IMG/VR virus record: IMGVR_UViG_3300028862_000012
Coordinates: 1 to 64,000 of that record
Strand: one strand, 5' to 3'
Length of the DNA stretch: 64,000 nt
Shown one piece after another: positions 16,066 to 56,406 of the stretch. Position numbers and translations under genes: made by a program. Each line of letters opens with the position of its first letter. Position 1 is the first letter of the stretch. The notes beneath the pieces were generated by a model. The model saw nothing but the letters and a program-made list of their open reading frames with translations. It was not told the DNA's origin and did no database searches.

Positions 16066-17241
16066 TTACTCCACTTTTATCCAAGTAAAATCTTTTACTG
16101 ATCTTTTTTCTTTTATTGATAAATAAATTCTAAATCTGTATTTAACATCTTTAAATACTAAAGAAGAAGCTTCATCTATACTATTATAAATAATATTGGT
16201 TTCTAAACACTTTACTTTAACACATCTAGGATTATTTAATCCCTTAGTTGCATTACTTCTTTTTTTAGAAAAACTTTCCATCTCCTCTTTAGTCTTATTT
16301 AATGTCCAATTTCCATTTTTTCTCCCTGTTGAATTTTTTGAACATAATATAGAAAAAGCTTGTTTTTTTTCATCTGACCAAGCTTGTCGTGTTATTCTAT
16401 TTTTATTACTTATAGCCTTTAGTTCTTCTTCTGTTTTTTCAAAACTCCAGCTTTTTTTATTTTTAGCCGCATTAGAATAATTATTAAAAATAACTTTTTT
16501 TTCTTCTTCTGTTTTATTTTCATATTTACTTTTACCTAATAGAGCTTTCGATATTTTTTTAGATATGGCTTTCTTTTCCTCTTGAGATTTTTTTGACATT
16601 GTTTTTGCCATTTTACTAATACTAATAGCTTTTTCTTCATTTGATTTATTATTCATAATAGTACTTTTTCTCTGTCTTAACAAGAGCTTTTCATTATCAG
16701 ACTTATTATTCCAAGTTTCTTTCCATTTTGAAACTCTTTTTTTAATTATTTTATCTTTTTCTTCTTTACTTTTATTTGAATTGGCTCTTTTTGCTTTTTC
16801 TATCATTTCTTTTTTCTCTTCATCTGATGCTGATAAATACCATTTCTGAAGAATATCATTTCCTATATTTATTTTCCTAAGCTTTTCAATCATTAAATCA
16901 TAGTTATCTTTAGTCATCCATTTAAAAGTATTTCCTCCTTTTCCTCCTTCATGAACATTGTAGCCCTGTTGAGTTGAAGCATAACTTTCTAATTTTTTTA
17001 TCCAATATTTTTCTTTTTCATTTAATTCATTCTTTGAACTAGAAGTATCAATGATATTCCAAGAAAAATTTTCAACACCATACTTTAATAAGGCTCTATG
17101 AAAAGGCAAAGAAGATTTTTCATAAGTTATTAGATGCTGTTTCTTTCTTAATTCTAAAGTTCTTATAGTCTGTCCTATATACTTTTTTCCATTTACTAAA
17201 TTAGTAACACAATAAATTATACCTTTACAATAATCATCCAT
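16066..17241 (-). CDS. GIY-YIG homing endonuclease with Lys-rich NUMOD3-like repeats
   Basis: GIIYCVTNLVNGKKYIGQT...ELNEKEKYWI...GYN; repeated K/E-rich helices; TAACTATTA motif upstream. Confidence 0.88.
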   Translation of the reverse strand: MDDYCKGIIYCVTNLVNGKKYIGQTIRTLELRKKQHLITYEKSSLPFHRALLKYGVENFSWNIIDTSSSKNELNEKEKYWIKKLESYASTQQGYNVHEGGKGGNTFKWMTKDNYDLMIEKLRKINIGNDILQKWYLSASDEEKKEMIEKAKRANSNKSKEEKDKIIKKRVSKWKETWNNKSDNEKLLLRQRKSTIMNNKSNEEKAISISKMAKTMSKKSQEEKKAISKKISKALLGKSKYENKTEEEKKVIFNNYSNAAKNKKSWSFEKTEEELKAISNKNRITRQAWSDEKKQAFSILCSKNSTGRKNGNWTLNKTKEEMESFSKKRSNATKGLNNPRCVKVKCLETNIIYNSIDEASSLVFKDVKYRFRIYLSIKEKRSVKDFTWIKVE

Positions 17242-24859: not shown

Positions 24860-27247
24860 TTATAATTCTTTTACATCTTTATATGTTTCTCCAGAAGCTA
24901 AATAGTCGCAATTAACCCAGCTAAGAGTTGCCTTAGTATCATCAATTTCTATTTGATCATTATGTGTAAAAGCATATTTAACTTTTTCAAAATATAAACC
25001 GTTTGATCTAACATCAAGCGCAATTCTATTACTTAACTTAGCATAATCTAATTCTTTATATTTTAAAGTTTCTTGCCATTTATTAGGTGCATTTGTTTTA
25101 TCATATGTATTAGGCAAAGGCGTAGTACTCCCACCAAAATAAGGATCTGCACCATGCCGTGTTTCATATGTTCGAGATACATAAACAATTTCATTAATAT
25201 CAAATTTCATTTTACGTTGCATATCTACTACATTTCGCATACCAGTATTAGAACGAGTAACATAAGGAAAATTACCCATAAACTGATCTAGTGCTAAACC
25301 TTGAGCACCTTCAAAAATTGCATATTCAAACTCTGGTATTTCAATAATAATGTGATTAAGCATAAAAGTTAAATCATCATAAAATGTTACTTGAAATTCT
25401 TCATTTTTAAATAAGTCATGCGCCCATTCTGGCATTACTTCTTTTAATTGATTATACCAATAGCGATTTATTTCATTAAACTTTTTATCAAATCTTGAAT
25501 CAAAGTTTTGAGAAATAATATAATTTATAGTTTCTTCTCTTTCAATAGTTTCACCAATTCCATAACCACAACTTCCATGTCTTGCTTTTCCACGTAGCTC
25601 TTCTTTAATTTGATTAGCAATCATATCCCATACTGTTGTAATTACGCAATTTGGATTAACATAAATTTTATAATTATCAGGAATTTTTAATTCCTTAAAC
25701 TCTTTTTTAAAAGCAGTAGGATTTAAAATAAAATGTTCTGATAGATATGTGGGAACGTTTGCAAAATAACCAGAACCAATATGAGAAAATACATGACGCT
25801 GACCTTCAGGAGTTACTACCGTATTATGAGAAATTGCACCATTAGCTATATAACTATGGGTACTATCCACTGTCAGATCATAAACATCTTCGATATCAAA
25901 TCCAAGTTCTATGTTTTCAATATCTACAATAAAATATTTTTCACACACTGAAATAATATTTGAAAACTTATTAGAAATAGTATTTTTATTATTCATAATA
26001 AATCCTGTTGTTATTTTATCTGTTTGCTTTCCTTTATTTGAAGACCCCTTAACTTCTTTTAGAATATTTCTTTTATTTGATAGTCCTATAATTAAGTCTT
26101 GACCTGAATTATTTTCATTATATACTTTTCTTTTCTCATTTAGTAAATAATCAAGTCTGTCTCTATGATAAAACGCCTCAAACCCTACTATCTCTTTAAA
26201 CCTCTCTAAGTTAGATAAAGAGCAAATTGTTAACTCATTTTGAGAAATATCAGAATGTATACCAAGAAGGTAAAGTAGCTGTTGGGTTTCTTTAATAAGA
26301 AAATGACTATTATTAAAGAATTTTATTCTTCCATAAATATTTTTACCTTTTGAATAATAAGTTATTCCTCCATCTGTATCAAACAATCCTCTTATATATC
26401 TTGCTATAATTGTTTTAGTACCCTCCATAACAAAATCTGGAGTTCTTTTTTCAGTAAGCTTTTTTAAATAGCATCCATAGGCAGTTAATACATTTAAAAA
26501 GTCTGTTGAATTTATAGTAATGGTTTTGCATTTTACTGATCTTCTATGTTGTTTAATAGTATAACTTAATCCAATTTCAATAGCAAACTGCTCTAACCAA
26601 TCAAGCACATCTTGTTTTATTTCAACATTAACTACTATTACAATTACTTTTTTTACATAATATCCATCCCCATTACATATTCCTATAAACTGTGCTAATT
26701 TTTCAATATTTATTTTTGTTAAATCAACTTTTACTTTATTATGAACAAAATCAGTCAGACTACTAACTTTTTTAATCTTATATTCTTTATTACCAGAATA
26801 AAAATTATATTCTTTTGGAAAGATAAATTGATGAATGTCTTTATTTAAATCAATCGAGCTAACCCATTCTTTATTAGAAGTTAATCCATTCCAAACATAA
26901 TATTTATGTGCATCAGTACATTTAAGTTCTACTCCATTTTTAAGACTTATTTTATTAACTTTTTTATTTTCTTCTTTATATAAAAGTGAAGTATTCTCAA
27001 TTTCTGTATTCATATTTAAAATAGATATACTTTTATTATTTGTTTCATTCCCTACTATATTCCCTAAATACTTTAATCCTGTGTTTGTATAAATAATAGT
27101 ATCTTTTGTCTGACAATGCCCTGCTTGACAACCGCCGTTGAATCTAACCACCATATCAGCATTATGTTTTCTGCAAAGGTAATCAGTCATGAGTCCTTTA
27201 CCTTCATCACCGTAATTGGCCCCTATGCAAATACTAGCCTTTTTCAT
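24860..27247 (-). CDS. purA: adenylosuccinate synthetase-like protein containing an intein
   Basis: [20 protein letters not shown]|[42 protein letters not shown]; likely start MKKASIC. Confidence 0.85.
25823..27115 (-). mobile_element. intein (431 aa) with LAGLIDADG homing endonuclease
   Basis: Starts CQTKDT after GH and ends [21 protein letters not shown] before T; FIGICNGDG and [10 protein letters not shown] motifs. Confidence 0.9.
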
Positions 27248-27330
27248 ATTCAACCTCATCATCTATATATTAATTTAAGCATATTATCAAATTAAAAGGC
27301 AAAGTATTTTTGTACTACTTTGCCTTTGTA

Positions 27331-28548: not shown

Positions 28549-28682
28549 CTTTTACTTCAACTGGTTCTACAGTAGCTTCACTTTTTTCAGTGACTACTTC
28601 TTTCTCAATAATTTCTTCTGCTGGCATTCCCATATTGTCTCCTTTTATTTAATGAAGAATAGAGTCTTCAGCTCTTTATTTA

Positions 28683-28753
28683 CTCGGACGGAAGAACTCG
28701 AATCCTCATGGACGGGATCAAAACCCGTAATCCTACCATTAGATGACATCCGA
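28683..28753 (-). tRNA. tRNA-Gln(UUG)
   Basis: Acceptor TCGGATG/CGTCCGA, anticodon arm ACGGG TTTTGAT CCCGT, T loop TTCGAGT; no encoded CCA. Confidence 0.85.
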
Positions 28754-28794
28754 AAGTACTTAATAAGTTTACTATACTAATTCTTTTGTGTCAA

Positions 28795-29550
28795 TTACTT
28801 AATACTTATAATGCAATAAACAGGAAAATGATCTGATACCGTTTTTCTGGTATTCCAATCTTGTGTCCAGTAGTCTACATCTGACTTTATTATTTTATTC
28901 ACTAATTCTTTTGAGACAAACATATGGTCATAACTATTAGAAGCACTTTTCATTCCTAATGTTGATTTATTTACACCGCTTACATTAGTACTGTACTTTG
29001 TAATATCAAAGTTCTTTACATTTTCTAAATTAAAATCACCACTAATGATAGTATTGTTTTCTTTATTAAAATAAGTATATAACTCATCCAAATTATTTAC
29101 TTCTGCAATTCTATCTTTTTCAGAGCTACCATAAATAATATGTACTATAACTAAATTTACTGAAAAATCAGAATTTAAATCTTTAATAGTAACACCATAA
29201 GGATTACGAACAAAACCAGTAGTAGGATATAAACCTATTTCTGTAACTGTCACTTTTTTAGTATTATAAAATACTCCAAAGTATTCTTTATATTTGTCTG
29301 TTCCTACAGAAGTTTTACTTATCACATATTTATAATCAGGAAGATATTGTAATGTTTGTTTCATTCCATTTTCATTCATTACCTCTATTGCACCACATAC
29401 ATCAAATGTACTAATTACAGAAGCTAATGTTTTATAATCTTTTGTTCCATCACCTAATCGTAACATATTATAACTTGCAATTGATAAACTCTGTGCTATA
29501 AGTAAAGCACTAACTAAACAAAATGCAATAATCGAAATAAATTTTTTCAT
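28795..29550 (-). CDS. secreted DNase I-like (EEP family) nuclease
   Basis: Signal peptide; SYNM, IEV, EYFG, SGDFN, YDHMF, SDHFPV motifs. Confidence 0.82.
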   Translation of the reverse strand: MKKFISIIAFCLVSALLIAQSLSIASYNMLRLGDGTKDYKTLASVISTFDVCGAIEVMNENGMKQTLQYLPDYKYVISKTSVGTDKYKEYFGVFYNTKKVTVTEIGLYPTTGFVRNPYGVTIKDLNSDFSVNLVIVHIIYGSSEKDRIAEVNNLDELYTYFNKENNTIISGDFNLENVKNFDITKYSTNVSGVNKSTLGMKSASNSYDHMFVSKELVNKIIKSDVDYWTQDWNTRKTVSDHFPVYCIISIK

Positions 29551-29582
29551 AATTAAATCCTTTATAGTCTAATAGTTAAAAA

Positions 29583-29668
29583 CGGAGCAAACAAGACTCG
29601 AACTTGTGATACCATTTCTGGTATGATAGGTTAGCAACCTATTGCAGTAGCCTCTGTGCCATTGCTCC
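29583..29668 (-). tRNA. tRNA-Ser(GCU)
   Basis: GGAGCAA/TTGCTCC, ATAGG TTGCTAA CCTAT, long variable arm. Confidence 0.88.
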
Positions 29669-29802
29669 AATGACTGTTCTCAGTCAGCGAGAATGCTTTT
29701 TTAACGACTCAAACATACGATTACGACTTGCATTATACACTTATTGCATTCTAAGTGCAAGTGCAACTGCTACGTGTTCAGACAAGCTTGAACGCCTCGC
29801 TT

Positions 29803-29890
29803 CAGAGTTAGAAAGATTCGGACTTTCGCTACCTTTTCGAGGTAGTACAGTTTTCAAGACTGTTACCTTCAACCACTCGGTCATAACTCC
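29803..29890 (-). tRNA. tRNA-Ser(UGA)
   Basis: GGAGTTA/TAACTCT, ACAGT CTTGAAA ACTGT, long variable arm; T loop TCCGAAT. Confidence 0.85.
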
Positions 29891-29898
29891 AAATAATA

Positions 29899-30084
29899 TT
29901 ATACTTCTTCTGGAATAAAATTTATAGTAATATTTACTAATTGTCCATCTTTTTGTTCAGTCCATAAAACTGAGTCTACACAACAAAGATTAATTCCCAT
30001 ATTATTAGGAATTACCTCTAAAGGAAAAGGACACTTATTCAAGTCCTCTTTAGAGTTTGATACTTTTAAAAATTCTGTTTTCAT
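29899..30084 (-). CDS. hypothetical protein
   Basis: SD AAGGAG. Confidence 0.5.
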   Translation of the reverse strand: MKTEFLKVSNSKEDLNKCPFPLEVIPNNMGINLCCVDSVLWTEQKDGQLVNITINFIPEEV

Positions 30085-30147
30085 ACAATTTGCTCCTTAT
30101 ATATTCTTTTACCTAAATAAATAGTTGCTTATCTTTTTAATAAGCAA

Positions 30148-30360
30148 TTAATCCTTGTACTGAAAATTTCTGTAATTTTTCCAGCTACGATAGTCTCCTA
30201 CTTTAGAAGCATATACACGATTATATTGCTTTGCACATTTTCTATGAGAATAATTACTTTTCCTTGAAAGAAAATCATCATCCCATTCTCCAGAACATAA
30301 AGCTATAATTTTATATTCTCTATAGCTATAGCTATCTTTACACTTAATAATTTTACCCAT
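30148..30360 (-). CDS. hypothetical basic protein
   Basis: SD AGGT; RSWKNYRNFQYK C-terminus. Confidence 0.45.
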   Translation of the reverse strand: MGKIIKCKDSYSYREYKIIALCSGEWDDDFLSRKSNYSHRKCAKQYNRVYASKVGDYRSWKNYRNFQYKD

Positions 30361-30619
30361 AGATAAGTTTACCTCACCTAATGTTCCATATAATCTCCTT
30401 AGTTAACTTTATTACTAAATCTACTCACTTGTGTTATCAATAACAGTTAGTCACTATAAATAGTTATAAAGTAATGACACGTTAATACGAATAGATTTAA
30501 TAATAAAAGTAAGATGAAATAGTTTAGGTGACTATTGTGGCACATCTTACTCACCAATAGATAACCTATTGGATTTTAAAGATCCTGATATGTAATCATC
30601 GGTAAATGATTACTATTCT

Positions 30620-30693
30620 TAGGACTAATTGGGCTTGAACCAATGACTTATTGCTTAGAAGGCAATTGCTCTATCCATCTGAGCTATAATCCC
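30620..30693 (-). tRNA. tRNA-Arg(UCU)
   Basis: GGGATTA/TAGTCCT, ATTGC CTTCTAA GCAAT. Confidence 0.9.
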
Positions 30694-30718
30694 AAACCTG
30701 TTATAAAAGTAAGATTAC

Positions 30719-30886
30719 TTAACTATGCTCTGCTCTTTCATGCCCACAGGTAGTGCATCGATCATTCCAACTACTACCACCATAATACTGATGACAGTTA
30801 CACTTCAAACAATAACCTGCACTATAGGCAAAGCCAATACCTGCAAGCAAAACCAAAGCCAATGTGACCAAAATAAACTTCTTCAT
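30719..30886 (-). CDS. secreted Cys/His-rich microprotein (55 aa, not in the ORF track)
   Basis: MKKFILVTLALVLLAGIGFA-YSAGYCLKCNCHQYYGGSSWNDRCTTCGHERAEHS; SD AAGGAG. Confidence 0.7.
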   Translation of the reverse strand: MKKFILVTLALVLLAGIGFAYSAGYCLKCNCHQYYGGSSWNDRCTTCGHERAEHS

Positions 30887-30895
30887 ATAGACTCC

Positions 30896-31081
30896 TTAAT
30901 CTAAGTTTCTTATAAAATGTTTTCTATAACCTTCTGCAAGTACTTCTTTTAATTTTCTTTCATTTTCCTCAATAGCATTAAAATAATATTCTTTCATTTT
31001 ATCTTTCAGTTCTGTAGTAAAATGATTAGTAATACCTTTTCTAATGTTATCTAATAACTTTTGTAATAAGTTTTCATTCAT
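30896..31081 (-). CDS. hypothetical protein
   Basis: SD AAGGA. Confidence 0.45.
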   Translation of the reverse strand: MNENLLQKLLDNIRKGITNHFTTELKDKMKEYYFNAIEENERKLKEVLAEGYRKHFIRNLD

Positions 31082-31094
31082 GTATGTTCCTTAA

Positions 31095-31167
31095 AGCGGT
31101 ATGTCGGAATCGAACCGATGACAATTAACTTGGAGGGCTAATGTTCTACCAACTGAACTAATACCGC
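31095..31167 (-). tRNA. tRNA-Gly(UCC), C33 variant
   Basis: GCGGTAT/ATACCGC, TTAGC CCTCCAA GTTAA. Confidence 0.85.
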
Positions 31168-31181
31168 ACACTTTATAATAG

Positions 31182-31622
31182 TTAATTATTTAAAACTTTC
31201 TTCTCAAGCCACTCGATATACTGACTTGTAGATGCTTCAAAAAATACTCCAAAGGTATTATAAAATTCATCGTGTAGTTGTTCTACTGTTTTCTTTATAA
31301 AGAAGTCATTAAACTCATCTGTACCCATTACATAAACTTCTACTTTTCCATCTTTGTAATAACCTGATTTAAACCAAGTCAAAGTAGGTTTTCTATTACT
31401 ATCCCAAAAAGAAGGAATGGCTACAGATTTATTAAACTCTTCATATGGTTTAAAATCAAGATATAAACAATATACATCCTCAGTAGGATCATTTATTTTT
31501 ATATTTATAATGTCACATTTCATAGGTGAATCTGCTTCCTCGCCTATCTGTGCAAGCTTGTCTGTTATCTGCAATCCCTTAATAGGAAAGTTATTTGATT
31601 TAGCCATGTCTTTAATCAGCAT
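31182..31622 (-). CDS. hypothetical protein
   Basis: SD AAGGAG. Confidence 0.55.
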   Translation of the reverse strand: MLIKDMAKSNNFPIKGLQITDKLAQIGEEADSPMKCDIINIKINDPTEDVYCLYLDFKPYEEFNKSVAIPSFWDSNRKPTLTWFKSGYYKDGKVEVYVMGTDEFNDFFIKKTVEQLHDEFYNTFGVFFEASTSQYIEWLEKKVLNN

Positions 31623-31634
31623 ATTTGCTCCTTA

Positions 31635-31856
31635 TTAAAAATAAACCTTTACTAAATCTTTAGTTATTATTCCCCAGTCTGGCTCTGTATCAATAATCAT
31701 TTCAATAAAAATAAAAGGATACTTTTTTGGTTTTCCGAATACTTTATATAATTCTGTATCACTAGAAGTAAGCCAATCTTTTACATGTTTTTTTGCTACA
31801 AACTTTTTATAGTCTTCAATGGAATTAATCAATGTTCCATTAATTTCCTTGTCCAT
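31635..31856 (-). CDS. hypothetical protein
   Basis: packed ORF. Confidence 0.5.
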   Translation of the reverse strand: MDKEINGTLINSIEDYKKFVAKKHVKDWLTSSDTELYKVFGKPKKYPFIFIEMIIDTEPDWGIITKDLVKVYF

Positions 31857-31859
31857 TAC

Positions 31860-32174
31860 TTATTCCTTATCCAGAACAGTACAAGTTTCAAACCAGTTAA
31901 ATAGTTCTATCATAATTTCTTTAGGAACACAAGCTGTATTCCATTCTTTTGTTACTTTATTCATTTTTTCACATTTATAATAATTAGTAACCATATACTC
32001 ACCATCAGAATGAAGATTAGGACAGTCTTTACACCTGTTTATTTTTACTATGCGCTTAAATTCTGATACAGGAATTTCTGATAAAGAATATCCCAGCATA
32101 GATTCATATGATTCAATATATTCCTCATTTGACATATTTCTAATATCTTTGCATATTTCATCACACTTACTCAT
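31860..32174 (-). CDS. hypothetical Cys-containing protein
   Basis: CKDCP...YKC. Confidence 0.5.
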   Translation of the reverse strand: MSKCDEICKDIRNMSNEEYIESYESMLGYSLSEIPVSEFKRIVKINRCKDCPNLHSDGEYMVTNYYKCEKMNKVTKEWNTACVPKEIMIELFNWFETCTVLDKE

Positions 32175-32506
32175 TTTGTATCCTGATATTTAATCATGAC
32201 TTGAGTGTAATAAAAAGTTTCATAACTATAACTAAGACAAATTACAGATATTCCACCAAGAGGAACCCAACCAATTTTAATCAAGTTTTTTACCTGAATT
32301 TCAAGATCAGAAATGTTTCGGTCTTGCAAAATATTATAGTCAATAATAATTTGTTCTGCTTTAATATTTACATTATCTTGCACCTTAGAAAGAGTATTTA
32401 CCTTAGAAGATGCATTTACATATTTTTGTTTTGTTTCACTTGATGTTTCTGCAAAAGTAAGCGATAGAGTGCAAGCAAGCAGAATAAGTGTAATAATCTT
32501 TTTCAT
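32171..32506 (-). CDS. secreted protein with DUF1737-like domain
   Basis: Signal peptide; LEIQVKNLIKIGWVPLGGISV...YTQVMIK. Confidence 0.55.
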   Translation of the reverse strand: MKKIITLILLACTLSLTFAETSSETKQKYVNASSKVNTLSKVQDNVNIKAEQIIIDYNILQDRNISDLEIQVKNLIKIGWVPLGGISVICLSYSYETFYYTQVMIKYQDTK

Positions 32507-32721
32507 ATTCCTTCTCCCATATTATTTTCGATAATAAACTGTTTCTTTTTAGCGTCTACTAAAACTGATATTTCTTTTACTGACTTTTTTATATAATCAT
32601 AGCAACGATAGGCATCACTATTTAAGCAACCCTCTAAGACTTCACAGTCTTCCTTAGAGTTTAGCTCAATTATAATTTTGTTGTTTTCCAATACAACTGT
32701 TATTGGTTTTTTGTCTGACAT
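32503..32721 (-). CDS. hypothetical protein
   Basis: SD AGGAG. Confidence 0.5.
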   Translation of the reverse strand: MSDKKPITVVLENNKIIIELNSKEDCEVLEGCLNSDAYRCYDYIKKSVKEISVLVDAKKKQFIIENNMGEGI

Positions 32722-33001
32722 ATTATTCTCCTAAATTAATATTTTCTTTAAGATCAACAGGCTCCCACAAATACCATCCAGTAAGAATAACTGGAACAAG
32801 CAATGTTTCACTACACAGAATGCTCCATACTATATTTCCTGCACTTACCCGATAGTAAACCTTTGGATTCATTTCATCTATATTAGCCAGCAACAGGTTT
32901 CTTTAATCCTGTGAAACCTTTTATATCTCTGGCAAAGGTACAAAAGTAAAGCCATACTAAATACATTTACTAAACTTGATAAGTGTTTAGTAAAAACTTT
33001 A

Positions 33002-33075
33002 TGGGCCTAGTTGGACTTGAACCAACGACCGACGGATTATGAGTCCGCAGCTCTAACCAACTGAGCTATAGGCCC
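33002..33075 (-). tRNA. tRNA with CAU anticodon (Ile2 or elongator Met; not initiator)
   Basis: GGGCCTA/TAGGCCC, GCGGA CTCATAA TCCGT; G1-C72 pair. Confidence 0.88.
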
Positions 33076-33205
33076 AAAAAACAAGTGTATAATATGCAAA
33101 GAAGTATGCTTGCCCATAATCTTTCTATGGATAAAATTTTTTCTTTGCATTAAAGATGTTATACAAGCATCTTAGTTCAGCAATACAACGTACTACTAAA
33201 TCTAT

Positions 33206-33286
33206 TGGACAGAGGAGGATTTGAACCTCCGAAGCCGAAGCAACGGTTTTACAGACCGCCGGTTTTAACCCCTTACCTATCTATCC
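33206..33286 (-). tRNA. tRNA-Tyr(GUA)
   Basis: GGATAGA/TCTGTCC, GCGGT CTGTAAA ACCGT, long variable arm. Confidence 0.88.
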
Positions 33287-33292
33287 ATAAAA

Positions 33293-33363
33293 AGTGCAGA
33301 GCAGGATTTGAACCTGCGATTATTAGTTTTGCAGATACTCTTTGACCGCTTGAGTGTCCACTC
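33293..33363 (-). pseudogene. degenerate tRNA-Cys(GCA)
   Basis: T arm GCAGG TTCAAAT CCTGC intact and CTGCAAA loop present, but the anticodon and acceptor stems do not pair. Confidence 0.55.
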
Positions 33364-33369
33364 AACAGA

Positions 33370-33639
33370 TTAGAAATCAAAACTACAACTACCTGAATAA
33401 TAATGAGATTTTCCATCAGAAGTGGTATAAAACAGATCATCGTTATCAACACCTACATAATCAATATGTCCATTACCGATTATTTCATCACCTGAAAGTT
33501 TATGCTTGATAATTGTTCCATCTTTTCCAGTTATAGAACGATACTGTGCTTGATTAGCATTTTTCTTTGCATCTGCAACCACACTACAGCTTGTGAATAA
33601 AAAAACAGTCAAGCAAACCAAAATAATAAGCTTCTTCAT
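33370..33639 (-). CDS. putative lipoprotein
   Basis: MKKLIILVCLTVFLFTSC lipobox; SD AGGAG. Confidence 0.65.
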   Translation of the reverse strand: MKKLIILVCLTVFLFTSCSVVADAKKNANQAQYRSITGKDGTIIKHKLSGDEIIGNGHIDYVGVDNDDLFYTTSDGKSHYYSGSCSFDF

Positions 33640-33654
33640 GTTACACTCCTAAAT

Positions 33655-33727
33655 CGGGGACAAGAGGGCTTGAACCTCTGACCTACAGGTTAACGGCCTG
33701 TTGCTCTACCGACTGAGCTATGTCCTC
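33655..33727 (-). tRNA. tRNA-Asn(GUU), C33 variant
   Basis: ACAGG CCGTTAA CCTGT; D arm GCTC/GAGC; one acceptor mismatch (A2-C71). Confidence 0.8.
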
Positions 33728-33731
33728 AAAA

Positions 33732-33928
33732 AAACTAATCTTGCTTTGTCATAACAACGGGTGGGAGATACTGTTATAACTAACAAGATTAGTTTATTGA
33801 TAGCTTTAATGTATCAAGGAGATATGCTGAAATCACCAAAAACAGCACACACTAAAGCTATCAATAAAAAAGTCAACAGAAAAACGGACAAGGATTAGGA
33901 AGTAAACCTATAATTAAACTGTTGACTT
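33732..33928 (-). ncRNA. array of three long hairpins between tRNAs
   Basis: Perfect stems 33732-43/33784-95 (12 bp), 33793-808/33853-68 (16 bp), 33870-79/33919-28 (10 bp). Confidence 0.5.
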
Positions 33929-33930
33929 AT

Positions 33931-34001
33931 AGGCGAGTACTGGAATCGAACCAATATTTAGAGATTAATTCATCTCTTGTCCTGCCCTAGACGAACTCGC
34001 C
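33931..34001 (-). tRNA. tRNA-like gene with an 8-nt anticodon loop, identity undetermined
   Basis: GGCGAGT/ACTCGCC, D arm GTCTAGGGCAGGAC, AGAGA TGAATTAA TCTCT, T loop TTCGATT. Confidence 0.7.
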
Positions 34002-34187
34002 AAACAAAGTTTTTAATACTTTAAGTGAAATCATTTTTCCACTTCTTTATTCGCTATATGCTTTTATTACAAGCACTAAAAACTTACAGAATAATTTAAG
34101 AAAAGTTTATCTGCATTACTTTCCCGAGATAGTTTATGTAACTATCAAAATAAAAACAACACTTATTCATTTTACAAGTTGTTGTTC

Positions 34188-34269
34188 TGCGAGATAAAAG
34201 TCTCGAACTTTCACGCCTTACGGCATATGCTCCTAGGGCACACGTGTCTACCAATTTCACCAATCTCGC
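34188..34269 (-). tRNA. tRNA-Leu(UAG), C33 variant
   Basis: GCGAGAT/ATCTCGC, TGTGC CCTAGGA GCATA, long variable arm. Confidence 0.85.
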
Positions 34270-45124: not shown

Positions 45125-46729
45125 TTAGGCTACTCTATTTAATAAAGGTAATACATTGTTATCAAGATATTCTTCTATATATTTTAGTTGTGAATATGGA
45201 ATCCTTAGTAACTGTATATTATTACTTATACAATAGTTTGTTTTAATTAAATCACGATTTTTCATTTCAGTATATAATTTTAGGATTTCACTATCTGTAA
45301 GATGTCGGTTTCTCATAAAATCAGAAAATTCTTCTAAACTGTTGTGTTGATTACCATCACATTCTATGCAAATATTAAAGTCTGGTAAATAAAAATCAAA
45401 AGGTAAAGTATTTTTAGATCGACAATTAGGAAATCTTTTCTGACTTTTATAATTTATATTATTATTTTTCAAATAATATTCTGTTTGTTTTTCTAAATTT
45501 GAAGAGCTACATTTTGGACAACCTTGAAAATGAATATGATTATTAGGTTGCATTAAAAATTCTCCATGCTCTTTGCAGACTATTATTACAGGTATATGCA
45601 TACCTGTGTACTCCACTTTGGAATAATCATATAGATCATGATGAATGTTCTTAAATCGCTTTATAACCTCTTCTTTATTAAGTCTTATATTAATATGAGA
45701 CTGCTCAACTCCACAAATAGGGCATCCTTCTCCTTGTAAATGAGCAGAAGCTTTCTTTAAAAAGATACCATGAACTTTGCACACTATTTTAACTTTATCT
45801 GAAAGAGTGCTAAAGTTCACTTGAGAATAATCATATTTATCTCCATGAATTTCTTTTGCTTTTTCTAAAAAATATTTTTTATTTTTTCTTCTATTATATC
45901 CTGTTTCAATATAAGAACATAAGCTACATCCTTTTGATTTCATATGATTAAAAGGCGTTTGCTCAAATATTCCATGAATAGGGCAAATAATTTTAACTGG
46001 AGTGTGGCAATTTTTATAGTCTACCAAACTATAATCATACTTATTATTATGAACTTGTTTTGCTTTTGGAATAAAAGTATCTTTTGAGTCATAAGTATAA
46101 ATATAAGTATAGTCTTCATATTTTGAGATCATACTACATTTCTGACACTCATGTCCAGCTAAATGAGAGTTTGCAGATTGAGTAAACTTTCCATGAATAG
46201 GACATATAATAATTACTTTTTCACTAAGTTTAGAAAAAGAAACTAGGCTGTAATCATATTTATTACTATAAATTTTATTTGCTCTCATAATAAACTCTTC
46301 TAAAGATATTCTTTTTAAGTCTGAATTTAATTTCTGAGCACATTTAAAGCAGTTCATTCCTAATAAATGATTTGCAGGTGACTGTTCAAACTCACCATGA
46401 ATCGGACAAATAATTTTAACTTTAATATTATTTTTTATATATTCTACTTTTGAATAGTCATATTTTTCACTATGAACTAATTTTGCTTTCTCAATAAACT
46501 CTTCAGTTGAACTTCTACATTTTAACCCTCTGAAAGAACATCCACATTTTTCACATCCATGACCTTGTAAGTGAGTATTTGCAATCTGCTCAAATTTTCC
46601 ATGCTTTTTACATATAATGATGATTTTACTACTACTATTAGTATAGATAGATTCTGAATAATCATACTTATTGTTATGAACTTTATTTGCGCGTTTAATA
46701 AATTCTTCTTGAGTTAATTTTTTTGACAT
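45125..46729 (-). CDS. homing endonuclease-like protein with six DUF723-like Zn repeats and a Vsr-like nuclease domain
   Basis: 6x (I/V)C..HG.F...H..G..C..C; LPFDFYLP..NICIECDG.QH. Confidence 0.82.
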   Translation of the reverse strand: MSKKLTQEEFIKRANKVHNNKYDYSESIYTNSSSKIIIICKKHGKFEQIANTHLQGHGCEKCGCSFRGLKCRSSTEEFIEKAKLVHSEKYDYSKVEYIKNNIKVKIICPIHGEFEQSPANHLLGMNCFKCAQKLNSDLKRISLEEFIMRANKIYSNKYDYSLVSFSKLSEKVIIICPIHGKFTQSANSHLAGHECQKCSMISKYEDYTYIYTYDSKDTFIPKAKQVHNNKYDYSLVDYKNCHTPVKIICPIHGIFEQTPFNHMKSKGCSLCSYIETGYNRRKNKKYFLEKAKEIHGDKYDYSQVNFSTLSDKVKIVCKVHGIFLKKASAHLQGEGCPICGVEQSHINIRLNKEEVIKRFKNIHHDLYDYSKVEYTGMHIPVIIVCKEHGEFLMQPNNHIHFQGCPKCSSSNLEKQTEYYLKNNNINYKSQKRFPNCRSKNTLPFDFYLPDFNICIECDGNQHNSLEEFSDFMRNRHLTDSEILKLYTEMKNRDLIKTNYCISNNIQLLRIPYSQLKYIEEYLDNNVLPLLNRVA

Positions 46730-49083: not shown

Positions 49084-49135
49084 AATTTACCTCTTATCTA
49101 CTTATAATAGTTATAAAAATAAATTAATTTACTAA

Positions 49136-49165
49136 TTGACAAAGGATTACTAATATCTATATAAT
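49136..49165 (+). promoter_or_regulatory. sigma70-type promoter
   Basis: TTGACA-18-TATAAT; 17-bp direct repeat atatctatataatataa at 49153 and 49189. Confidence 0.65.
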
Positions 49166-51408: not shown

Positions 51409-51891
51409 ATGAACGAAACTGATCTGAACAAGATTATTAGTGATTCAGCCTATATAAATAGCGGACACTATCATAAAATAAGCGATGATAGTAGAACTCA
51501 AAAGCCTTATGATGGATATGGTATTATTAATCATTTACCTGCTTATATTGAGTGTAAATTTAAAAAAGAAATTGATGCTTTTAATTTTAATAAAATAGAG
51601 CCTCATCAATTACGCAATTTAACTACTATCCGAAAAGAACTATCTGTTCCTAATTATTCTTTAATTGTATTAGGCTTATGGAAGTCACGAGAGTATTTTA
51701 ATATTATGTTCTTCGATATTGAGTATATAAATACCTTGATAAGTTTAGGAAAAAAATCTATACTAAAAAAGGAATTAGAGGAACTACTTCGACTAAATAA
51801 ATTTTTACCTGTTATTACAAAGACAATTGATAATGAAAAATATAAAATAGTTGAATTAGAAAAGCTAGATTCAGTAATTATCAAAAATTAA
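51409..51891 (+). CDS. recU: RecU-like Holliday junction resolvase
   Basis: KPYDG...YIECK...IEPHQL. Confidence 0.75.
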   Translation: MNETDLNKIISDSAYINSGHYHKISDDSRTQKPYDGYGIINHLPAYIECKFKKEIDAFNFNKIEPHQLRNLTTIRKELSVPNYSLIVLGLWKSREYFNIMFFDIEYINTLISLGKKSILKKELEELLRLNKFLPVITKTIDNEKYKIVELEKLDSVIIKN

Positions 51892-51895
51892 CTAA

Positions 51896-51928
51896 GGAAT
51901 TATGTACTTAATTGACCAAAGTGTCAAT
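51896..51928. repeat. inverted repeat flanking tnpB (downstream copy)
   Basis: ggaattatgtacttaattgaccaaagtgtcaat is the reverse complement of 53229-53262 with 2 substitutions and 1 indel. Confidence 0.85.
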
Positions 51929-53179
51929 CTTTCTATTTTCCTGCTTCAACGAAGCATGACTTACTATAGATTTCTCTATACCAGAGGTCTTCTTCTCCAC
52001 AGGCTTAAATTCGGATGATCCCCACCCTATTTTTTCTAAATTTAATTCTTGTAATCCATAATCTACAAGATTTCTTCCAGCATTCATATCTCGACTGATT
52101 TCTTTTCCACAATTAGGACACATCCAAACTCTTTCTGATAATTGTAAATCTTTTTTCTTATATCCACAAAAGTTACAAGTCTTAGAACTTGCAAACCATT
52201 TATCAGCTTCAATCAAAGTTTTATTATACCATAAAGATTTATAACGTAATTGTCTAATAAATTCTGAATAGCCTAAATCCATAACAGATTTTCCTAAGTT
52301 TAAGGCTTGACTCATTCCTTTTAATGATAAGCTTTCTACAACTATTACGTCATTTTCAGTAATCAATTTTTTGGATAATTTATTAGTAAAATCTTTTCGT
52401 TTATTAGTAATACTTTCATAAACTACATTAATTTTATGAATACTTTTATACCAATTTTTTGATCCTTTCTGCTTACGAGATAATTGCTGTTGTAAGTGTT
52501 TTAACTTAGGCTCATTTTTTCGATATAGTCTTTCAAAATTAACAGGAGATTTCCCATATTCATCTATATAAAAACTATCCATACTCATATCTAAACCCTT
52601 GATTTTCGGGTTAGACTTTTGTACAACAGGTTTTATATCAATATCACATTCAAACAAAATAGAAACAAAAAACTTCCCTGTAGGTGATCGAGATACAGTA
52701 GCATTTTTTATACAACCATTATAGGGCTTCATTTTATTTCTAAACTTTACCCAACCAATTTTTGGAAGCTTTATTTTATCATTTAATATCTCTACAGATT
52801 TTTCACTGGTCATAGTTGTTCTATAACTATTTTTAGTTTTTTTCTTTTTAAACTTTGGAAATCCAGACTTCCCTTTTCTTTTATCAGATAAAGATTTAAA
52901 GAAATTACTATAGGCTGTTGTTAAATTAATACGAGACTGCTGTAGAGCTTGACTATCAGCTTCTTTTAGCCATTCAAACTCCTGCTTATATTCTTTTTCA
53001 GTTTTATATTTATGCTCATATAGTTTACGTTTATCATCTTTTAATAAAGTGTATGTTTGTATTCTTTCATACAACATCATATTATATAAAGCTCTACAAC
53101 ATCCTAATGTTTTATTTATTTGAGTAGTTTGTGTAGTATTAGGATAAATCCTAACTTTATAAGCCTTATAAATAATCAT
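51908..53179 (-). CDS. tnpB: TnpB (IS200/IS605 OrfB) RNA-guided endonuclease; no TnpA nearby
   Basis: YKAYKVRIYP HTH; RuvC GLD, VESL, RDMNA; Zn finger SSKTCNFCG...CPNCG. Confidence 0.93.
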   Translation of the reverse strand: MIIYKAYKVRIYPNTTQTTQINKTLGCCRALYNMMLYERIQTYTLLKDDKRKLYEHKYKTEKEYKQEFEWLKEADSQALQQSRINLTTAYSNFFKSLSDKRKGKSGFPKFKKKKTKNSYRTTMTSEKSVEILNDKIKLPKIGWVKFRNKMKPYNGCIKNATVSRSPTGKFFVSILFECDIDIKPVVQKSNPKIKGLDMSMDSFYIDEYGKSPVNFERLYRKNEPKLKHLQQQLSRKQKGSKNWYKSIHKINVVYESITNKRKDFTNKLSKKLITENDVIVVESLSLKGMSQALNLGKSVMDLGYSEFIRQLRYKSLWYNKTLIEADKWFASSKTCNFCGYKKKDLQLSERVWMCPNCGKEISRDMNAGRNLVDYGLQELNLEKIGWGSSEFKPVEKKTSGIEKSIVSHASLKQENRKIDTLVN

Positions 53180-53204
53180 AAAATGTAAGTAGTAACCTCT
53201 ATTA

Positions 53205-53213
53205 TAATAGTTA
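53205..53213 (-). promoter_or_regulatory. TAACTATTA motif upstream of tnpB (one of about 16 copies; putative phage late promoter)
   Basis: Exact 9-mer recurring upstream of genes, oriented with them. Confidence 0.6.
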
Positions 53214-53228
53214 GATAAAATTTAGGAT

Positions 53229-53262
53229 ATTGACACATTGGGTCAATTAGGTACATAATTCC
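53229..53262. repeat. inverted repeat flanking tnpB (upstream copy)
   Basis: attgacacattgggtcaattaggtacataattcc; internal ATTGAC/GTCAAT hairpin. Confidence 0.85.
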
Positions 53263-53296
53263 CTTATATAACTATTAGTATAAGGAATTATTTCAT

Positions 53297-54085
53297 ATGG
53301 CAAGATCAAAAACGTGTAATGTATGTGAAGCAAAAATAAAATCAGATGAAAACAATATATATCCAAAAGAATGTCCTCATTGTGGAAGTGATATATGGAA
53401 CATGCCTGTAGATGAAGTTATTTTACATAAGCTACAAGATCAATATATGCTCTATAGAGATGATAAATCTTTTGGAGCTTTTCTATTAGGTGTAAAAAAA
53501 ATATTACGAAATATAATAATTGGTAAATTAAAGAGTAATAGTTTTATAGTTCAAGATGATGAATTAGATGACCTTATACTGGATTCCTTAGAAAAAATAA
53601 TTAAATTATATAATAAACCAAGCTTTTATATTAAAGATTCTTTCATTGGATACTTTTCTCAAGTAGTTTTATATCCTATGTATAATCCTAAGAAGAAAGA
53701 GTATCAAAAAAATGAAGTTAGTTATAATACTCCTCTTAAAACAAGTAATACTAAAATAACTACAGAAGATGAAAAAACTTTATTAAATTATTTGGAAGAA
53801 CAAGAATTATCTCATGATATGGATAAATTACTATATGAAGATAAATTAGTATTTGAATTACTAAACTTGATTGAAGCTATTTATAAAAAAACCTGTCAAG
53901 AGCTATCACCTCAGTTTGGATACATATTAGTTTTTCTTTTAAAAGAGTTTTTTAATAATAAAAAGAATTCTTATTTTATAGAGTTTTTCAACTATTATAA
54001 AAAAGATTATTTTGAATATTTTGAAAAAAGCATTATTATAATCCGCAACTATATTACAGAATACGAGAAAGAAGGTCATTTATGA
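53297..54085 (+). CDS. Zn-ribbon plus sigma-factor-like protein (putative)
   Basis: CNVC...CPHC; DELDDLILDSLEKIIKLY resembles sigma region 2; SYNTPL resembles region 3. Confidence 0.4.
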   Translation: MARSKTCNVCEAKIKSDENNIYPKECPHCGSDIWNMPVDEVILHKLQDQYMLYRDDKSFGAFLLGVKKILRNIIIGKLKSNSFIVQDDELDDLILDSLEKIIKLYNKPSFYIKDSFIGYFSQVVLYPMYNPKKKEYQKNEVSYNTPLKTSNTKITTEDEKTLLNYLEEQELSHDMDKLLYEDKLVFELLNLIEAIYKKTCQELSPQFGYILVFLLKEFFNNKKNSYFIEFFNYYKKDYFEYFEKSIIIIRNYITEYEKEGHL

Positions 54086-55052: not shown

Positions 55053-56396
55053 ATGAAAACAATACAGGAAAAATACCCTGATTTTATTATTGATGACGTA
55101 ACTAAAGATATACTTGAATGCTTATTTACTACTACTGACAATATGTTTATAACTGGCCCTGCTGGTTGTGGTAAAAGCACTTTACTTAAAGTAATCAAAG
55201 ACCCTGAAATTTTTAATAAAAATGTAGTAATTCTTTGTCCTACAGGGGTCAGTGCAGTAAATGTAGAAGGCGTTACTTTTCATAATTTTTTTAAGTTTCC
55301 TCCTTGTTTATTAAGTGATGATGATTGTATGAAATCTTTACTTAGCTTTGGTGAAGAGTCGGATGAGGAAGACTGCATGAGAATGCAAATACTTCGAGCT
55401 GTTGACGTTTTTATTATTGATGAAATAAGTATGGTTAATCCTAATATGTTTGATAGTGTAGACTTATTCTTACGACATCATTTAGACAGTGATATCCCTT
55501 TTGCTGGAAAACGATTAATATTATTTGGAGACTTATATCAATTACCTCCTGTTGTTAAAAAAGGTTCTAATGAATATACAGTACTTAGCGAAAGATATGG
55601 ACAAAATGGATTTTACTTTTTCAATAGTGATGTATACCAGAAAAGTATTTTTAAAAAATTCGTAATGGAAAAGATTCATCGACAAACAGATACTACCTTT
55701 ATTAATATACTTCACAGAATTCGTAAAGGATTACAAACAATAGATGATATAAAAGAAATTAATAATTTTGTTTGCGACGAGGGTGATTATATGGATAAAT
55801 ATAATCATTACCTGTATGTTTGCTATACTAATGCAATAGCAGATAACATAAATCAAATGTATTTGGATTTAATACAATCTGATAGTAAAACCTACTATGC
55901 AGAAAGTTTTGGAAAAGTAAAAGCAAAAGATTTCACTGCTCCTGAAGAACTAATTTTAAAAGTCGGTGCTCAAGTAATGGTATGTGCTAACACAGAAGGT
56001 GTTTACAATGGAATGATTGGCGAAGTAACTAGATTAGAAGATGATAAAATATATATTGTAGACAAATCAGGTATGCATTACTCTATTTCTAAATATACAT
56101 GGAAATCATATGACTATACTTTAAATAGTAAAAAGATAGAACATACTGTTGTTGGTAAATATATTCAGTTTCCATTAAAATTAGCTTTTGCATTAAACGC
56201 TCACAAGTGTCAAGGACTAACATTAGATAATATTTATCTTGATATAGGTACGGGAAGTTTTACTACAGGTCAATTTTATGTAGCACTAAGTAGATTACGT
56301 ACATTTGAAGGATTAGGATTAAAGAAGCCTATCAATATGCTTGAAATAAAAGTTGATAAAGTAGTAACTGAATTTTTTGAAAATTTAGAAAAATAA
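55053..56396 (+). CDS. PIF1/RecD-like SF1B helicase
   Basis: GPAGCGKST, IIDEISM, GDLYQLPPV, HRQ, HKCQGLTLD, YVALSR. Confidence 0.92.
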   Translation: MKTIQEKYPDFIIDDVTKDILECLFTTTDNMFITGPAGCGKSTLLKVIKDPEIFNKNVVILCPTGVSAVNVEGVTFHNFFKFPPCLLSDDDCMKSLLSFGEESDEEDCMRMQILRAVDVFIIDEISMVNPNMFDSVDLFLRHHLDSDIPFAGKRLILFGDLYQLPPVVKKGSNEYTVLSERYGQNGFYFFNSDVYQKSIFKKFVMEKIHRQTDTTFINILHRIRKGLQTIDDIKEINNFVCDEGDYMDKYNHYLYVCYTNAIADNINQMYLDLIQSDSKTYYAESFGKVKAKDFTAPEELILKVGAQVMVCANTEGVYNGMIGEVTRLEDDKIYIVDKSGMHYSISKYTWKSYDYTLNSKKIEHTVVGKYIQFPLKLAFALNAHKCQGLTLDNIYLDIGTGSFTTGQFYVALSRLRTFEGLGLKKPINMLEIKVDKVVTEFFENLEK

Positions 56397-56406
56397 CTAT
56401 TATAAT

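What the first reader, a model, noticed from the sequence alone, without database searches (positions are those of the whole stretch)
51894..53277. TnpB cassette bounded by ~33-bp inverted repeats; predicted guide matches its own upstream region
Seen: tnpB with all three RuvC acidic residues (GLD, VES, RD) is flanked by 51896-51928 and 53229-53262. These are reverse complements beyond their internal ATTGAC/GTCAAT hairpins, including the outer GTACATAATTCC. Known: IS200/605 elements have subterminal hairpins rather than TIRs, and the omega-RNA guide is the sequence just outside the right end. Inference: the guide here (after ...GGTCAA: TTAAGTACATAATTCC) would match TTAGGTACATAATTCC at about 53247-53262, in the divergent promoter region of tnpB and the sigma-like gene. 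This suggests autoregulation, a repeat/anti-repeat precursor, or a TIR-type carrier element. No TnpA or clear target-site duplication is visible, and tnpB carries the phage TAACTATTA motif, suggesting domestication.
Basis: partly seen in the sequence, partly recalled or inferred. Interest (0 to 1): 0.68.

Follow-up and report, generated by a model that had tools for sequence, protein, structure and literature searches.

The report
Phage TnpB cassette with inverted ends
A 1.4-kb selfish RNA-guided nuclease (TnpB) cassette sits between two genes of a giant phage, and its 33-bp inverted repeats are the cassette's own two ends rather than a guide matching its own promoter, which is unusual because this transposon family normally has no inverted ends.

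Summary
A 423-aa TnpB gene (51908-53179, minus strand) with an intact RuvC triad is flanked by inverted repeats at 51896-51928 and 53229-53262. They match at 31 of 33 positions with one indel and occur nowhere else in the 224-kb contig.

Three related cassettes in other phage contexts share the repeat-covered 3' sequence up to ...AATTCC and diverge immediately after it. That stretch is therefore the right end of the element and the last part of the omega-RNA scaffold, not the guide.

The real guide is the next 16 nt (51895-51880), covering the stop region of the RecU-like gene. It has no match upstream of tnpB.

A related phage contig (L212) carries the two flanking genes adjacent to each other with no cassette. 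About 51892-53268 is therefore inserted DNA and both repeat arms lie inside it.

tnpB carries the phage's own promoter-like motif (TAACTATTA). No TnpA was found in the window.

A second phage-borne TnpB lineage (L213/L214) also has exactly terminal 26-27-nt inverted repeats.

Best reading: a TnpA-less IS200/IS605-type TnpB/omega-RNA cassette adapted to phages, probably acting as an RNA-guided homing endonuclease. Its mirror-symmetric ends are atypical and their role is unknown.

The parts
51892..53268 (-). Inserted cassette relative to the empty allele (boundaries uncertain by 1-6 nt at each side)
   Evidence: In L212 the RecU-like homologue (75% id) is followed after TAA-TT by TAACTATTAG and the homologue of the 262-aa gene (65% id, E 7e-80). 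In the window, about 1.38 kb lies between the stop codon (51889-51891) and TAACTATTAG (53269).
51908..53179 (-). tnpB, 423 aa, RuvC D/E/D triad and zinc ribbon intact
   Evidence: Pfam. ISDra2 TnpB E = 1e-73 with catalytic residues aligned. PHROG transposase family 506.
51896..51928 (-). Right end (RE) arm of the inverted repeat: terminal hairpin 51911-51928 plus 15-nt tail 51896-51910. It overlaps the tnpB stop codon at 51908-51910.
   Evidence: The hairpin shows compensatory changes in relatives and the tail is conserved. L120, L205 and L199 diverge immediately after ...TYC.
53229..53262 (-). Left end (LE) arm: an inverted copy of the RE hairpin plus tail. Complementarity may run on to 53267.
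   Evidence: Absent from the empty allele. A homologous arm is present in L120 (24 nt, 88%), vestigial in L205 and absent in L199.
51896..52030 (-). Omega-RNA scaffold, 3' part (5' limit not determined): stem 1 at 52013-52027, RAGATH-18-like stem at 51938-52003, terminal hairpin and tail
   Evidence: RNAalifold on 18 homologous 3' regions gave 3 helices, with 22 of 26 pairs keeping pairing through double changes. Sub-threshold RAGATH-18 match at 28 bits. Single-sequence fold.
51880..51895 (-). Predicted guide: the 16 nt just outside the RE (TTAGTTAATTTTTGAT), antisense to the stop region of the RecU-like gene
   Evidence: Inferred from the RE boundary and from the published rule that the guide is the flank 3' of the RE (PMC8612924). 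Unique in the window.
53205..53213 (-). Phage-type promoter-like motif TAACTATTA upstream of tnpB, inside the cassette
   Evidence: 17 copies in the window against 4 expected, lying 15-45 nt upstream of start codons. The tnpB genes of L120, L199 and L205 have TAACTATAT at the same place, and other genes of those phages carry the motif too.
53269..53296 (+). Native promoter-like motif and RBS of the 262-aa gene (not part of the cassette)
   Evidence: The same TAACTATTAGTATAAGGAA is present upstream of the homologue in the empty alleles L211 and L212.
51409..51891 (+). Left flanking gene, RecU-like Holliday junction resolvase
   Evidence: Pfam RecU weak hit. PHROG 843, E = 9e-9.
53297..54085 (+). 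Right flanking gene, 262 aa, N-terminal zinc ribbon, function unknown
   Evidence: No Pfam or PHROG family. Only one homologue found in the protein database.

Best explanation
This is a TnpA-less TnpB/omega-RNA cassette of the IS200/IS605 kind (IS1341-type architecture). It belongs to a small lineage that lives in AT-rich phages. It is inserted in the few bases between the stop codon of a RecU-like gene and the promoter of the next gene of a 224-kb phage. tnpB is expressed from a phage-type promoter carried inside the cassette. The omega-RNA overlaps the 3' end of tnpB, and its scaffold ends with the terminal hairpin plus a 15-nt tail, which is the right repeat arm. The guide is the following 16-20 nt of phage DNA. 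The likely activity, by inference, is RNA-guided cleavage of cassette-free alleles of the same locus in co-infecting phages, followed by recombinational copying of the cassette. This is homing, as with the free-standing homing endonucleases that this phage also carries. The left arm is an inverted copy of the right terminus, so the cassette has true terminal inverted repeats that act at the DNA level as element ends. Their exact role is not established; it could be recognition on either strand by a transposase supplied in trans, or maintenance by gene conversion.
For: Shown: TnpB identity and the intact catalytic triad. Shown: the omega-RNA scaffold is conserved with covariation. Shown: the RE boundary, from four cassettes in different contexts. 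Shown: the empty allele in a related phage places both arms inside the insertion. Shown: the phage promoter-like motif is inside the cassette in all four members and is shared by other genes of these phages. Shown: no Y1 TnpA in the window and no transposase among 31 ORFs scanned against Pfam, 29 of them of 200 aa or more. Shown: no transposase next to the L120, L003 or L214 cassettes. The arms evolve in concert: C in both arms here and T in both arms of L120. A second lineage, L213/L214 (80% id TnpB, unrelated flanks), has 26-27-nt repeats ending exactly where homology between the two copies ends. Its left arm is far better conserved than the neighbouring non-coding DNA, and it also shows one concerted change. 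In both lineages the left arm lies upstream of the tnpB promoter, so it is not in the tnpB mRNA. The homing function rests on published work on IS605-family TnpB (abstract of PMC10690162; PMC8612924; review PMC13565253). The phage also carries GIY-YIG, I-HmuI-like, DUF723 and intein-LAGLIDADG genes.
Against: No RNA or activity data exist. The TAM could not be determined: canonical relatives have TTTAT 5' of the LE, whereas here only GTTAT/TATAAG lies next to the arm. No empty allele of the same phage species was found; three assemblies of this phage all carry the cassette in the same orientation. The guide does not match the diverged empty allele L212. The left arm is decayed in L205 and absent in L199, so it is not needed for keeping the cassette. 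Only one concerted change per lineage supports interaction between the arms. IS200/IS605 elements are defined as lacking terminal inverted repeats, so family membership is incomplete.
Confidence: 0.6

Rival explanations
1. The 15-16 nt after the hairpin form a fixed guide that targets the near-identical copy upstream of tnpB, giving autoregulation of the divergent promoter region (TldR-like) or a repeat/anti-repeat pair.
For: 14 of 15 tail positions match the upstream arm. The tail is conserved in four cassettes, which a fixed internal guide would also predict.
Against: The tail occupies the position of the conserved scaffold end (TAGTTCAC) of canonical relatives and contains the tnpB stop codon. 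The RE copy itself would be an identical target. The bases 5' of the upstream copy (GTCAA) are the same as at the RE and unlike the family TAM TTTAT. The RuvC triad is intact, so binding would mean cutting the phage's own genome. L199 and L205 keep the tail but have lost the upstream copy.
Confidence: 0.05
2. The arms are outward-facing host-type promoters that the cassette carries, so that insertion in either orientation is not polar on phage genes.
For: Each arm holds TTGACA-17/18-CATAAT (11 of 12) reading out of the cassette. These are two of only nine such sites in 64 kb.
Against: Such sites are not enriched in the window (9 against 6.7 in shuffles). The -35 element is absent in L120, L205 and L199 (my reading). 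The downstream gene keeps its native promoter. The RE arm would read antisense into the RecU-like gene.
Confidence: 0.1
3. It is a non-autonomous TIR transposon moved by an unrelated (for example DDE) transposase encoded elsewhere. TnpB is cargo, as with IS630-linked TnpBs and Fanzor elements.
For: Repeats are exactly terminal in two lineages. Symmetrical ends are published for IS630-linked TnpBs (PMC10691335). TIRs form part of the Fanzor1 guide-RNA scaffold (PMC10711439).
Against: No target-site duplication is seen in any of the six copies. No DDE or other transposase is in the window or next to relatives. The closest relatives (60-65% id) have classical IS605-type ends with TTTAT and direct hairpins.
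Confidence: 0.15
4. It is a decaying, immobile relic. The left arm arose by a chance inverted duplication of the right end and has no function.
For: The left arm is lost in L199 and L205. No TnpA is present. The cassette is fixed in all three assemblies of this phage.
Against: The ORF, catalytic residues and scaffold are intact. The same architecture occurs in a second lineage, where the left arm is conserved (21 of 25) inside poorly conserved DNA. Concerted changes occur in both lineages.
Confidence: 0.15

Closest known systems
IS200/IS605-family TnpB-only elements (IS1341 type), e.g. ISDra2 TnpB/omega-RNA
   Same: TnpB fold and catalytic triad. Omega-RNA overlaps the 3' end of tnpB. Subterminal hairpins at both ends. 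Guide is the flank after the RE. No target duplication. The closest relatives have TTTAT plus canonical ends.
   Different: The left end is an inverted rather than direct counterpart of the right end, giving terminal inverted repeats. The RE tail after the hairpin is 15 nt, not 8. The hairpins are AT-rich. A phage-type promoter lies inside the element. No TnpA is present.
Fanzor1 elements in TIR transposons of eukaryotic viruses (PMC10711439)
   Same: A TnpB-family nuclease is the only gene of a non-autonomous element in a large virus. The right TIR forms the end of the guide-RNA scaffold and the guide lies beyond it.
   Different: Those are eukaryotic, have target-site duplications, and belong to a different protein clade. 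Here there is no duplication and the host is a phage.
Free-standing homing endonuclease genes of T4-like phages (intronless homing; review PMC13565253)
   Same: An intergenic selfish nuclease gene with its own phage promoter between conserved genes. It is predicted to cut the cassette-free allele of a co-infecting phage.
   Different: Recognition here would be by RNA guide plus TAM. No experimental evidence exists for this cassette.
RAYT genes flanked by REPs in inverted orientation (PMC2817692)
   Same: A gene of the IS200/IS605 world flanked by hairpin-containing repeats in inverted orientation.
   Different: The flanked gene there is a Y1 transposase and the repeats are abundant genome-wide. 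Here the gene is tnpB and there are just two copies.
IS607-type TnpB with RAGATH-18 reRNA (PMC11061315)
   Same: The central scaffold stem resembles RAGATH-18. An AG-rich sequence (AAGGG here, AGGAG in L120) lies at the outer left end, like the published TAMs AGGAG/GAGGG.
   Different: The Rfam score is below threshold here and absent in relatives. The RNA overlaps the ORF. No serine recombinase is present. The protein is much closer to ISDra2 TnpB than to 8iaz, the next-best solved TnpB-like chain (labelled only 'Transposase').

Membership tests
IS200/IS605 (TnpB-only, IS1341 type) | TnpB with HTH, OrfB_IS605 and zinc-ribbon domains and a RuvC D/E/D triad | tested here: met
IS200/IS605 (TnpB-only, IS1341 type) | Structured omega-RNA overlapping the 3' end of tnpB and ending at the RE | tested here: met
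   Covariation in 22 of 26 pairs across 18 relatives. RE boundary. No RNA data.
IS200/IS605 (TnpB-only, IS1341 type) | Subterminal hairpins at both ends in the same orientation, and no terminal inverted repeats | tested here: not met
   Hairpins are present, but the left end is an inverted copy of the right terminus. Canonical relatives have direct hairpins. Family definition.
IS200/IS605 (TnpB-only, IS1341 type) | No target-site duplication | tested here: met
   None at the boundaries of the window cassette, L120, L205, L199, L213 or L214.
IS200/IS605 (TnpB-only, IS1341 type) | Conserved TAM immediately 5' of the LE | tested here: inconclusive
   TTTAT in canonical relatives. Here GTTAT lies 5 nt outside the arm. 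ATATAA is shared with L120 only, not with L205.
IS200/IS605 (TnpB-only, IS1341 type) | Y1 (HUH) TnpA in the element or genome | tested here: not met
   None in the 64-kb window or beside L120, L199, L205 or L003. The other 160 kb of the contig was not visible. A TnpA lies next to L201 but outside its RE.
IS607 with RAGATH-18 reRNA | RAGATH-18 at or above the Rfam gathering score, downstream of and separate from the ORF | tested here: not met
   28 bits against 44.9, and the match is inside the ORF. No hit in 15 relatives.
IS607 with RAGATH-18 reRNA | Serine-recombinase TnpA | tested here: not met
   No resolvase domain in any ORF scanned.
TldR (nuclease-dead TnpB repressors) | Inactivated RuvC and a guide complementary to a promoter flanked by a TAM | tested here: not met
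   The triad is intact. The true guide has no second match.
TIR (cut-and-paste) transposons carrying TnpB or Fanzor | Terminal inverted repeats | tested here: met
TIR (cut-and-paste) transposons carrying TnpB or Fanzor | Target-site duplication and a cognate DDE transposase | tested here: not met
   No duplication seen. No DDE transposase in the window or in flanks of relatives.

The most novel reading that the evidence does not exclude
A previously undescribed class of TnpB/omega-RNA elements specialised for phage genomes. The classical asymmetric IS200/IS605 ends have been replaced by mirror-symmetric ends: hairpin plus tail, with the outermost bases of one end being the reverse complement of the other. 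Both DNA strands then present the same end structure. This could let a single-strand transposase act on either strand whatever the replication direction, or keep the ends uniform by recombination. The right repeat doubles as the omega-RNA scaffold end, as in eukaryotic Fanzor1 elements.
Probability: 0.2. Interest if true: 0.7.

Novelty: new variant of a known kind. Interest (0 to 1): 0.5.

Why it matters
TnpB is the ancestor of Cas12 and a compact genome-editing nuclease. How TnpA-less copies persist and move is still open. This locus offers a clean natural example: a phage cassette with an intact nuclease and guide RNA, a defined insertion site, and an empty allele in a relative. That makes RNA-guided homing between co-infecting phages directly testable. 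Exactly terminal inverted repeats were found in two phage-borne lineages of a family that is defined by lacking them. In both, the right repeat forms the end of the guide-RNA scaffold. This parallels eukaryotic Fanzor elements and may show how TnpB elements change their mode of mobility. For anyone programming this TnpB, the corrected scaffold/guide boundary is the practical point.

Tried and rejected
- **Close phage relatives by DNA:** megablast of 7.2 kb against 50,697 phage records found nothing.
- **Flanking proteins in IMG/VR:** only the contig itself was found.
- **DNA patterns for the repeat core, the RE tail and the linker in IMG/VR:** no further members; the linker pattern hits were unrelated.
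- **Rfam:** only a sub-threshold RAGATH-18 match in the window and nothing in 15 relatives.
- **My first boundary estimate:** by homology with canonical relatives I first placed the RE end 8 nt after the hairpin. Closer relatives corrected this to 15 nt.
- **Pre-existing phage promoter:** the idea that the upstream arm is an existing phage promoter was rejected by the empty allele.
- **RNA panhandle or 5'UTR-3' pairing within tnpB mRNA:** rejected, because the left arm lies upstream of the tnpB promoter motif in both lineages.
- **Inversion between the arms (guide switching):** no inverted isomer appears among three assemblies of this phage, and the other flank has no suitable TAM. It remains untested.
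- **TA or other target duplications:** not consistent across copies.
- **Structure prediction of the 262-aa neighbour:** unusable (pLDDT 48), so 'sigma-like' stays unverified.
- **P0005:** it shows the same C-terminal tail type, but no DNA could be fetched.
- **Not used:** complex prediction and the representative-protein search, because they would not bear on the question.

Full report
**Source.** The window is the first 64 kb of IMGVR_UViG_3300028862_000012, a 223,865-bp viral contig, and window coordinates equal contig coordinates. The DNA is very AT-rich and has no close relative among deposited phage genomes.

**Observation.** The ORF at 51908-53179 (minus strand, 423 aa) is a TnpB.
- It has the three Pfam domains of the family.
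- It aligns end to end with ISDra2 TnpB structures at E = 1e-73.
- The catalytic D, E and D fall on its GLD, VES and RD motifs.

The inverted repeat is real. 51896-51928 and 53229-53262 are complementary at 31 of 33 positions with one indel. The 22-nt core is found only at these two places in the window, against 0.02 expected, and nowhere else in IMG/VR. Each arm contains an ATTGAC...GTCAAT hairpin, and complementarity continues about 15 nt outward. Among 142 distinct TnpB loci fetched here, this locus has the highest inverted-match score between the upstream region and the 3' end, 25 against a median of 8.5.

**Where the element ends.**

Canonical relatives (60-65% identity):
- These are L121, L122, L127, L002, L124, L126 and L201.
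- They have classical IS200/IS605 ends. TTTAT precedes the left end.
- A GC-rich hairpin lies 15-19 nt inside the left end.
- A similar hairpin in the same orientation sits at the right end, followed by 8 nt (TAGTTCAC) that contain the tnpB stop codon.
- After those 8 nt the sequence is unrelated between copies.

AT-rich subgroup:
- It comprises L120 (66% identity), L199 (67%), L205 (56%) and this window.
- It shares a different right end: the linker GAAWATAGAAA, an AT-rich hairpin with compensatory changes (ATTGAC/GTCAAT, ATTGAT/ATCAAT, CTTTGA/TCAAAG), and a conserved 15-nt tail TAAGTAYATAAKTYC.
- The four sequences diverge immediately after the tail.
- The right end is therefore at 51896.

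By the published rule (PMC8612924), the guide is the flank. That is 51895-51880 on the minus strand, antisense to the stop region of the RecU-like gene. It has no other match in the window.

**Omega-RNA.** An alignment of 18 homologous 3' regions gives three helices, and 22 of 26 pairs keep pairing through changes on both sides. The middle helix is the weak RAGATH-18 match. RAGATH-18 proper is published as the scaffold core of IS607-type TnpBs (PMC11061315). Here the score is below threshold, relatives give no hit, and the RNA overlaps the ORF.

**Empty site.** The only homologues of the two flanking genes come from short Logan contigs.
- In L212 the RecU-like homologue (75% identity) is followed after 48 nt by the homologue of the 262-aa gene (65% identity, E = 7e-80).
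- The intergenic DNA there reads TAA-TT-TAACTATTAG.... L211 shows the same upstream sequence.
- In the window, about 1.38 kb (about 51892-53268) lies between the stop codon and TAACTATTAG.

Both repeat arms are therefore inserted DNA. The promoter-like motif and RBS of the 262-aa gene are native. Three independent assemblies of this same phage (99.9% identical) all carry the cassette in the same place and orientation.

**Expression context.** TAACTATTA occurs 17 times in the window against 4 expected, almost always 15-45 nt upstream of a start codon or a tRNA gene. tnpB has one copy 24 nt upstream of its ATG, inside the cassette. The tnpB genes of L120, L199 and L205 carry TAACTATAT at the same place, and other genes of those phages and of L212 carry the motif too. 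So the lineage uses a promoter type shared by this group of phages. The left arm lies upstream of that motif and is therefore not part of the predicted tnpB mRNA.

**Transposases.** A profile built from 21 Y1 TnpA ORFs found in more distant loci detects nothing in the window (best E = 0.16). It also detects nothing beside L120, L199, L205 or L003. It does hit an ORF next to L201, but that ORF lies outside the L201 right end. No DDE, serine or tyrosine recombinase domain appears in the 31 ORFs scanned against Pfam, which include every ORF of 200 aa or more. None appears in neighbours of L120, L003 or L214 either.

**The repeats as a lineage feature.**
- L120 keeps a 24-nt, 88% arm pair. L205 has only a vestige and L199 has none.
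- Where this cassette has C in GTACATAA in both arms, L120 has T in both arms, which is one concerted change.
- A second lineage shows the same architecture independently: L003/L213 and L214, whose TnpBs are 80% identical to each other and 53% identical to this one, in two different large phage contigs.
- In that lineage, 26-27-nt repeats start and stop exactly where homology between the two copies starts and stops (GGCTCAAGTG... and ...CACTTGAGCC). The flanks are unrelated.
- Its left arm is conserved at 21 of 25 positions inside otherwise poorly conserved DNA, and it also shows one concerted change.

Both IS200/IS605 and IS607 are described as lacking terminal inverted repeats. Known parallels are:
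- IS630-linked TnpBs with symmetrical ends;
- Fanzor1 elements, whose TIR is part of the guide-RNA scaffold;
- RAYT genes flanked by inverted REPs.

**Mechanism.**

Shown:
- identity of the cassette and its boundaries;
- intact nuclease and scaffold;
- phage-type promoter inside the cassette;
- absence of a transposase nearby.

Inferred from family knowledge: TnpB with its omega-RNA cuts cassette-free alleles, recognised as a TAM followed by the guide match, and recombination with a cassette-bearing genome copies the cassette in. This makes it an RNA-guided counterpart of the phage's other homing endonucleases.

Not established:
- The TAM could not be determined.
- What the inverted ends do is unknown.

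Because the left arm is outside the transcript and is exactly terminal, a DNA-level role as an element end is the most economical reading. An outward-promoter role is possible, since both arms hold TTGACA-17/18-CATAAT, but that is not conserved in relatives.

**Verdict.** The self-targeting guide idea is rejected. The cassette is an ordinary TnpB element in most respects. It has an unusual, recurrent mirror-symmetric end structure and a well-defined insertion site in a jumbo phage.

Noticed in passing
L213 (=L003) 2890-2915 / 4185-4210 in L003 coordinates; L214 upstream and downstream of 1501-2688: A second phage-borne TnpB lineage (two large viral contigs, unrelated flanks) has exactly terminal 26-27-nt inverted repeats, GGCTCAAGTG...CACTTGAGCC. 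The left arm is much better conserved than its surroundings.
   Followed up: partly
L212 588-620 (also L211 11-45): The empty allele contains TAAGGAAGATATACTT between two TATAAGGAA copies. This resembles the window's left junction TAAGGAATTATGTACTT (51893-51909), the complement of the RE tail. It could be a footprint of a lost cassette, a target preference, or chance. It is unexplained.
   Followed up: partly
window 51893-51903 and 53281-53291; 53256-53292: There is an 11-bp perfect direct repeat, TAAGGAATTAT, at the RE junction and at the RBS of the 262-aa gene. The outer part of the left arm can pair with that RBS, with the TAACTATTAG motif in the loop (predicted hairpin, z-score only -1.5). 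Read-through transcripts might therefore have the RBS masked.
   Followed up: partly
contig 143.8-145.1 kb, outside the window (L005 2995-4200; identical in L006): The same phage has a second tnpB (401 aa, 45% identical). Its 3' region keeps the central scaffold stem but lacks a terminal hairpin. It runs into the next gene's RBS, and a TAACTATTA motif follows at L005 4312.
   Followed up: no
window, 17 sites (e.g. 49105-49113, 53205-53213, 53269-53277, 56394-56402): TAACTATTA is a strongly over-represented motif 15-45 nt upstream of start codons and of a tRNA gene. It is probably a phage-specific promoter. The same motif is seen in related AT-rich phage contigs (L120, L199, L212).
   Followed up: partly
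window 24860-27262 (-) and 8999-11827 (-): An adenylosuccinate-synthetase-like gene is interrupted by an intein with a LAGLIDADG endonuclease, and there is a family A DNA polymerase with 3'-5' exonuclease. Phage PurA-like genes with a dedicated PolA recall 2-aminoadenine (Z-base) genomes (from my own knowledge). This was not tested.
   Followed up: no
window 16066-17241 (-), 7327-8991 (-), 45125-46729 (-): There are further selfish-nuclease-like genes: a GIY-YIG domain protein, an I-HmuI/NUMOD-like protein and a DUF723 protein. L199 has a DUF723 gene near its tnpB as well.
   Followed up: no
window 28682-34269 (-): A cluster of 10 tRNA genes (Gln, Ser x2, Arg, Gly, Met, Tyr, Asn, Leu and one with an irregular anticodon loop).
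   Followed up: no
window 49136-49165 (+): A perfect 12 of 12 sigma-70-type promoter match (TTGACA-18-TATAAT) lies just upstream of the UvrD-like helicase gene, in a divergent intergenic region.
   Followed up: no
L263 (contig Ga0311367_10014558, 8,591 bp): One assembly of the same phage breaks inside tnpB, at about window 52695. The reason is unknown; it might reflect population heterogeneity at the cassette.
   Followed up: no
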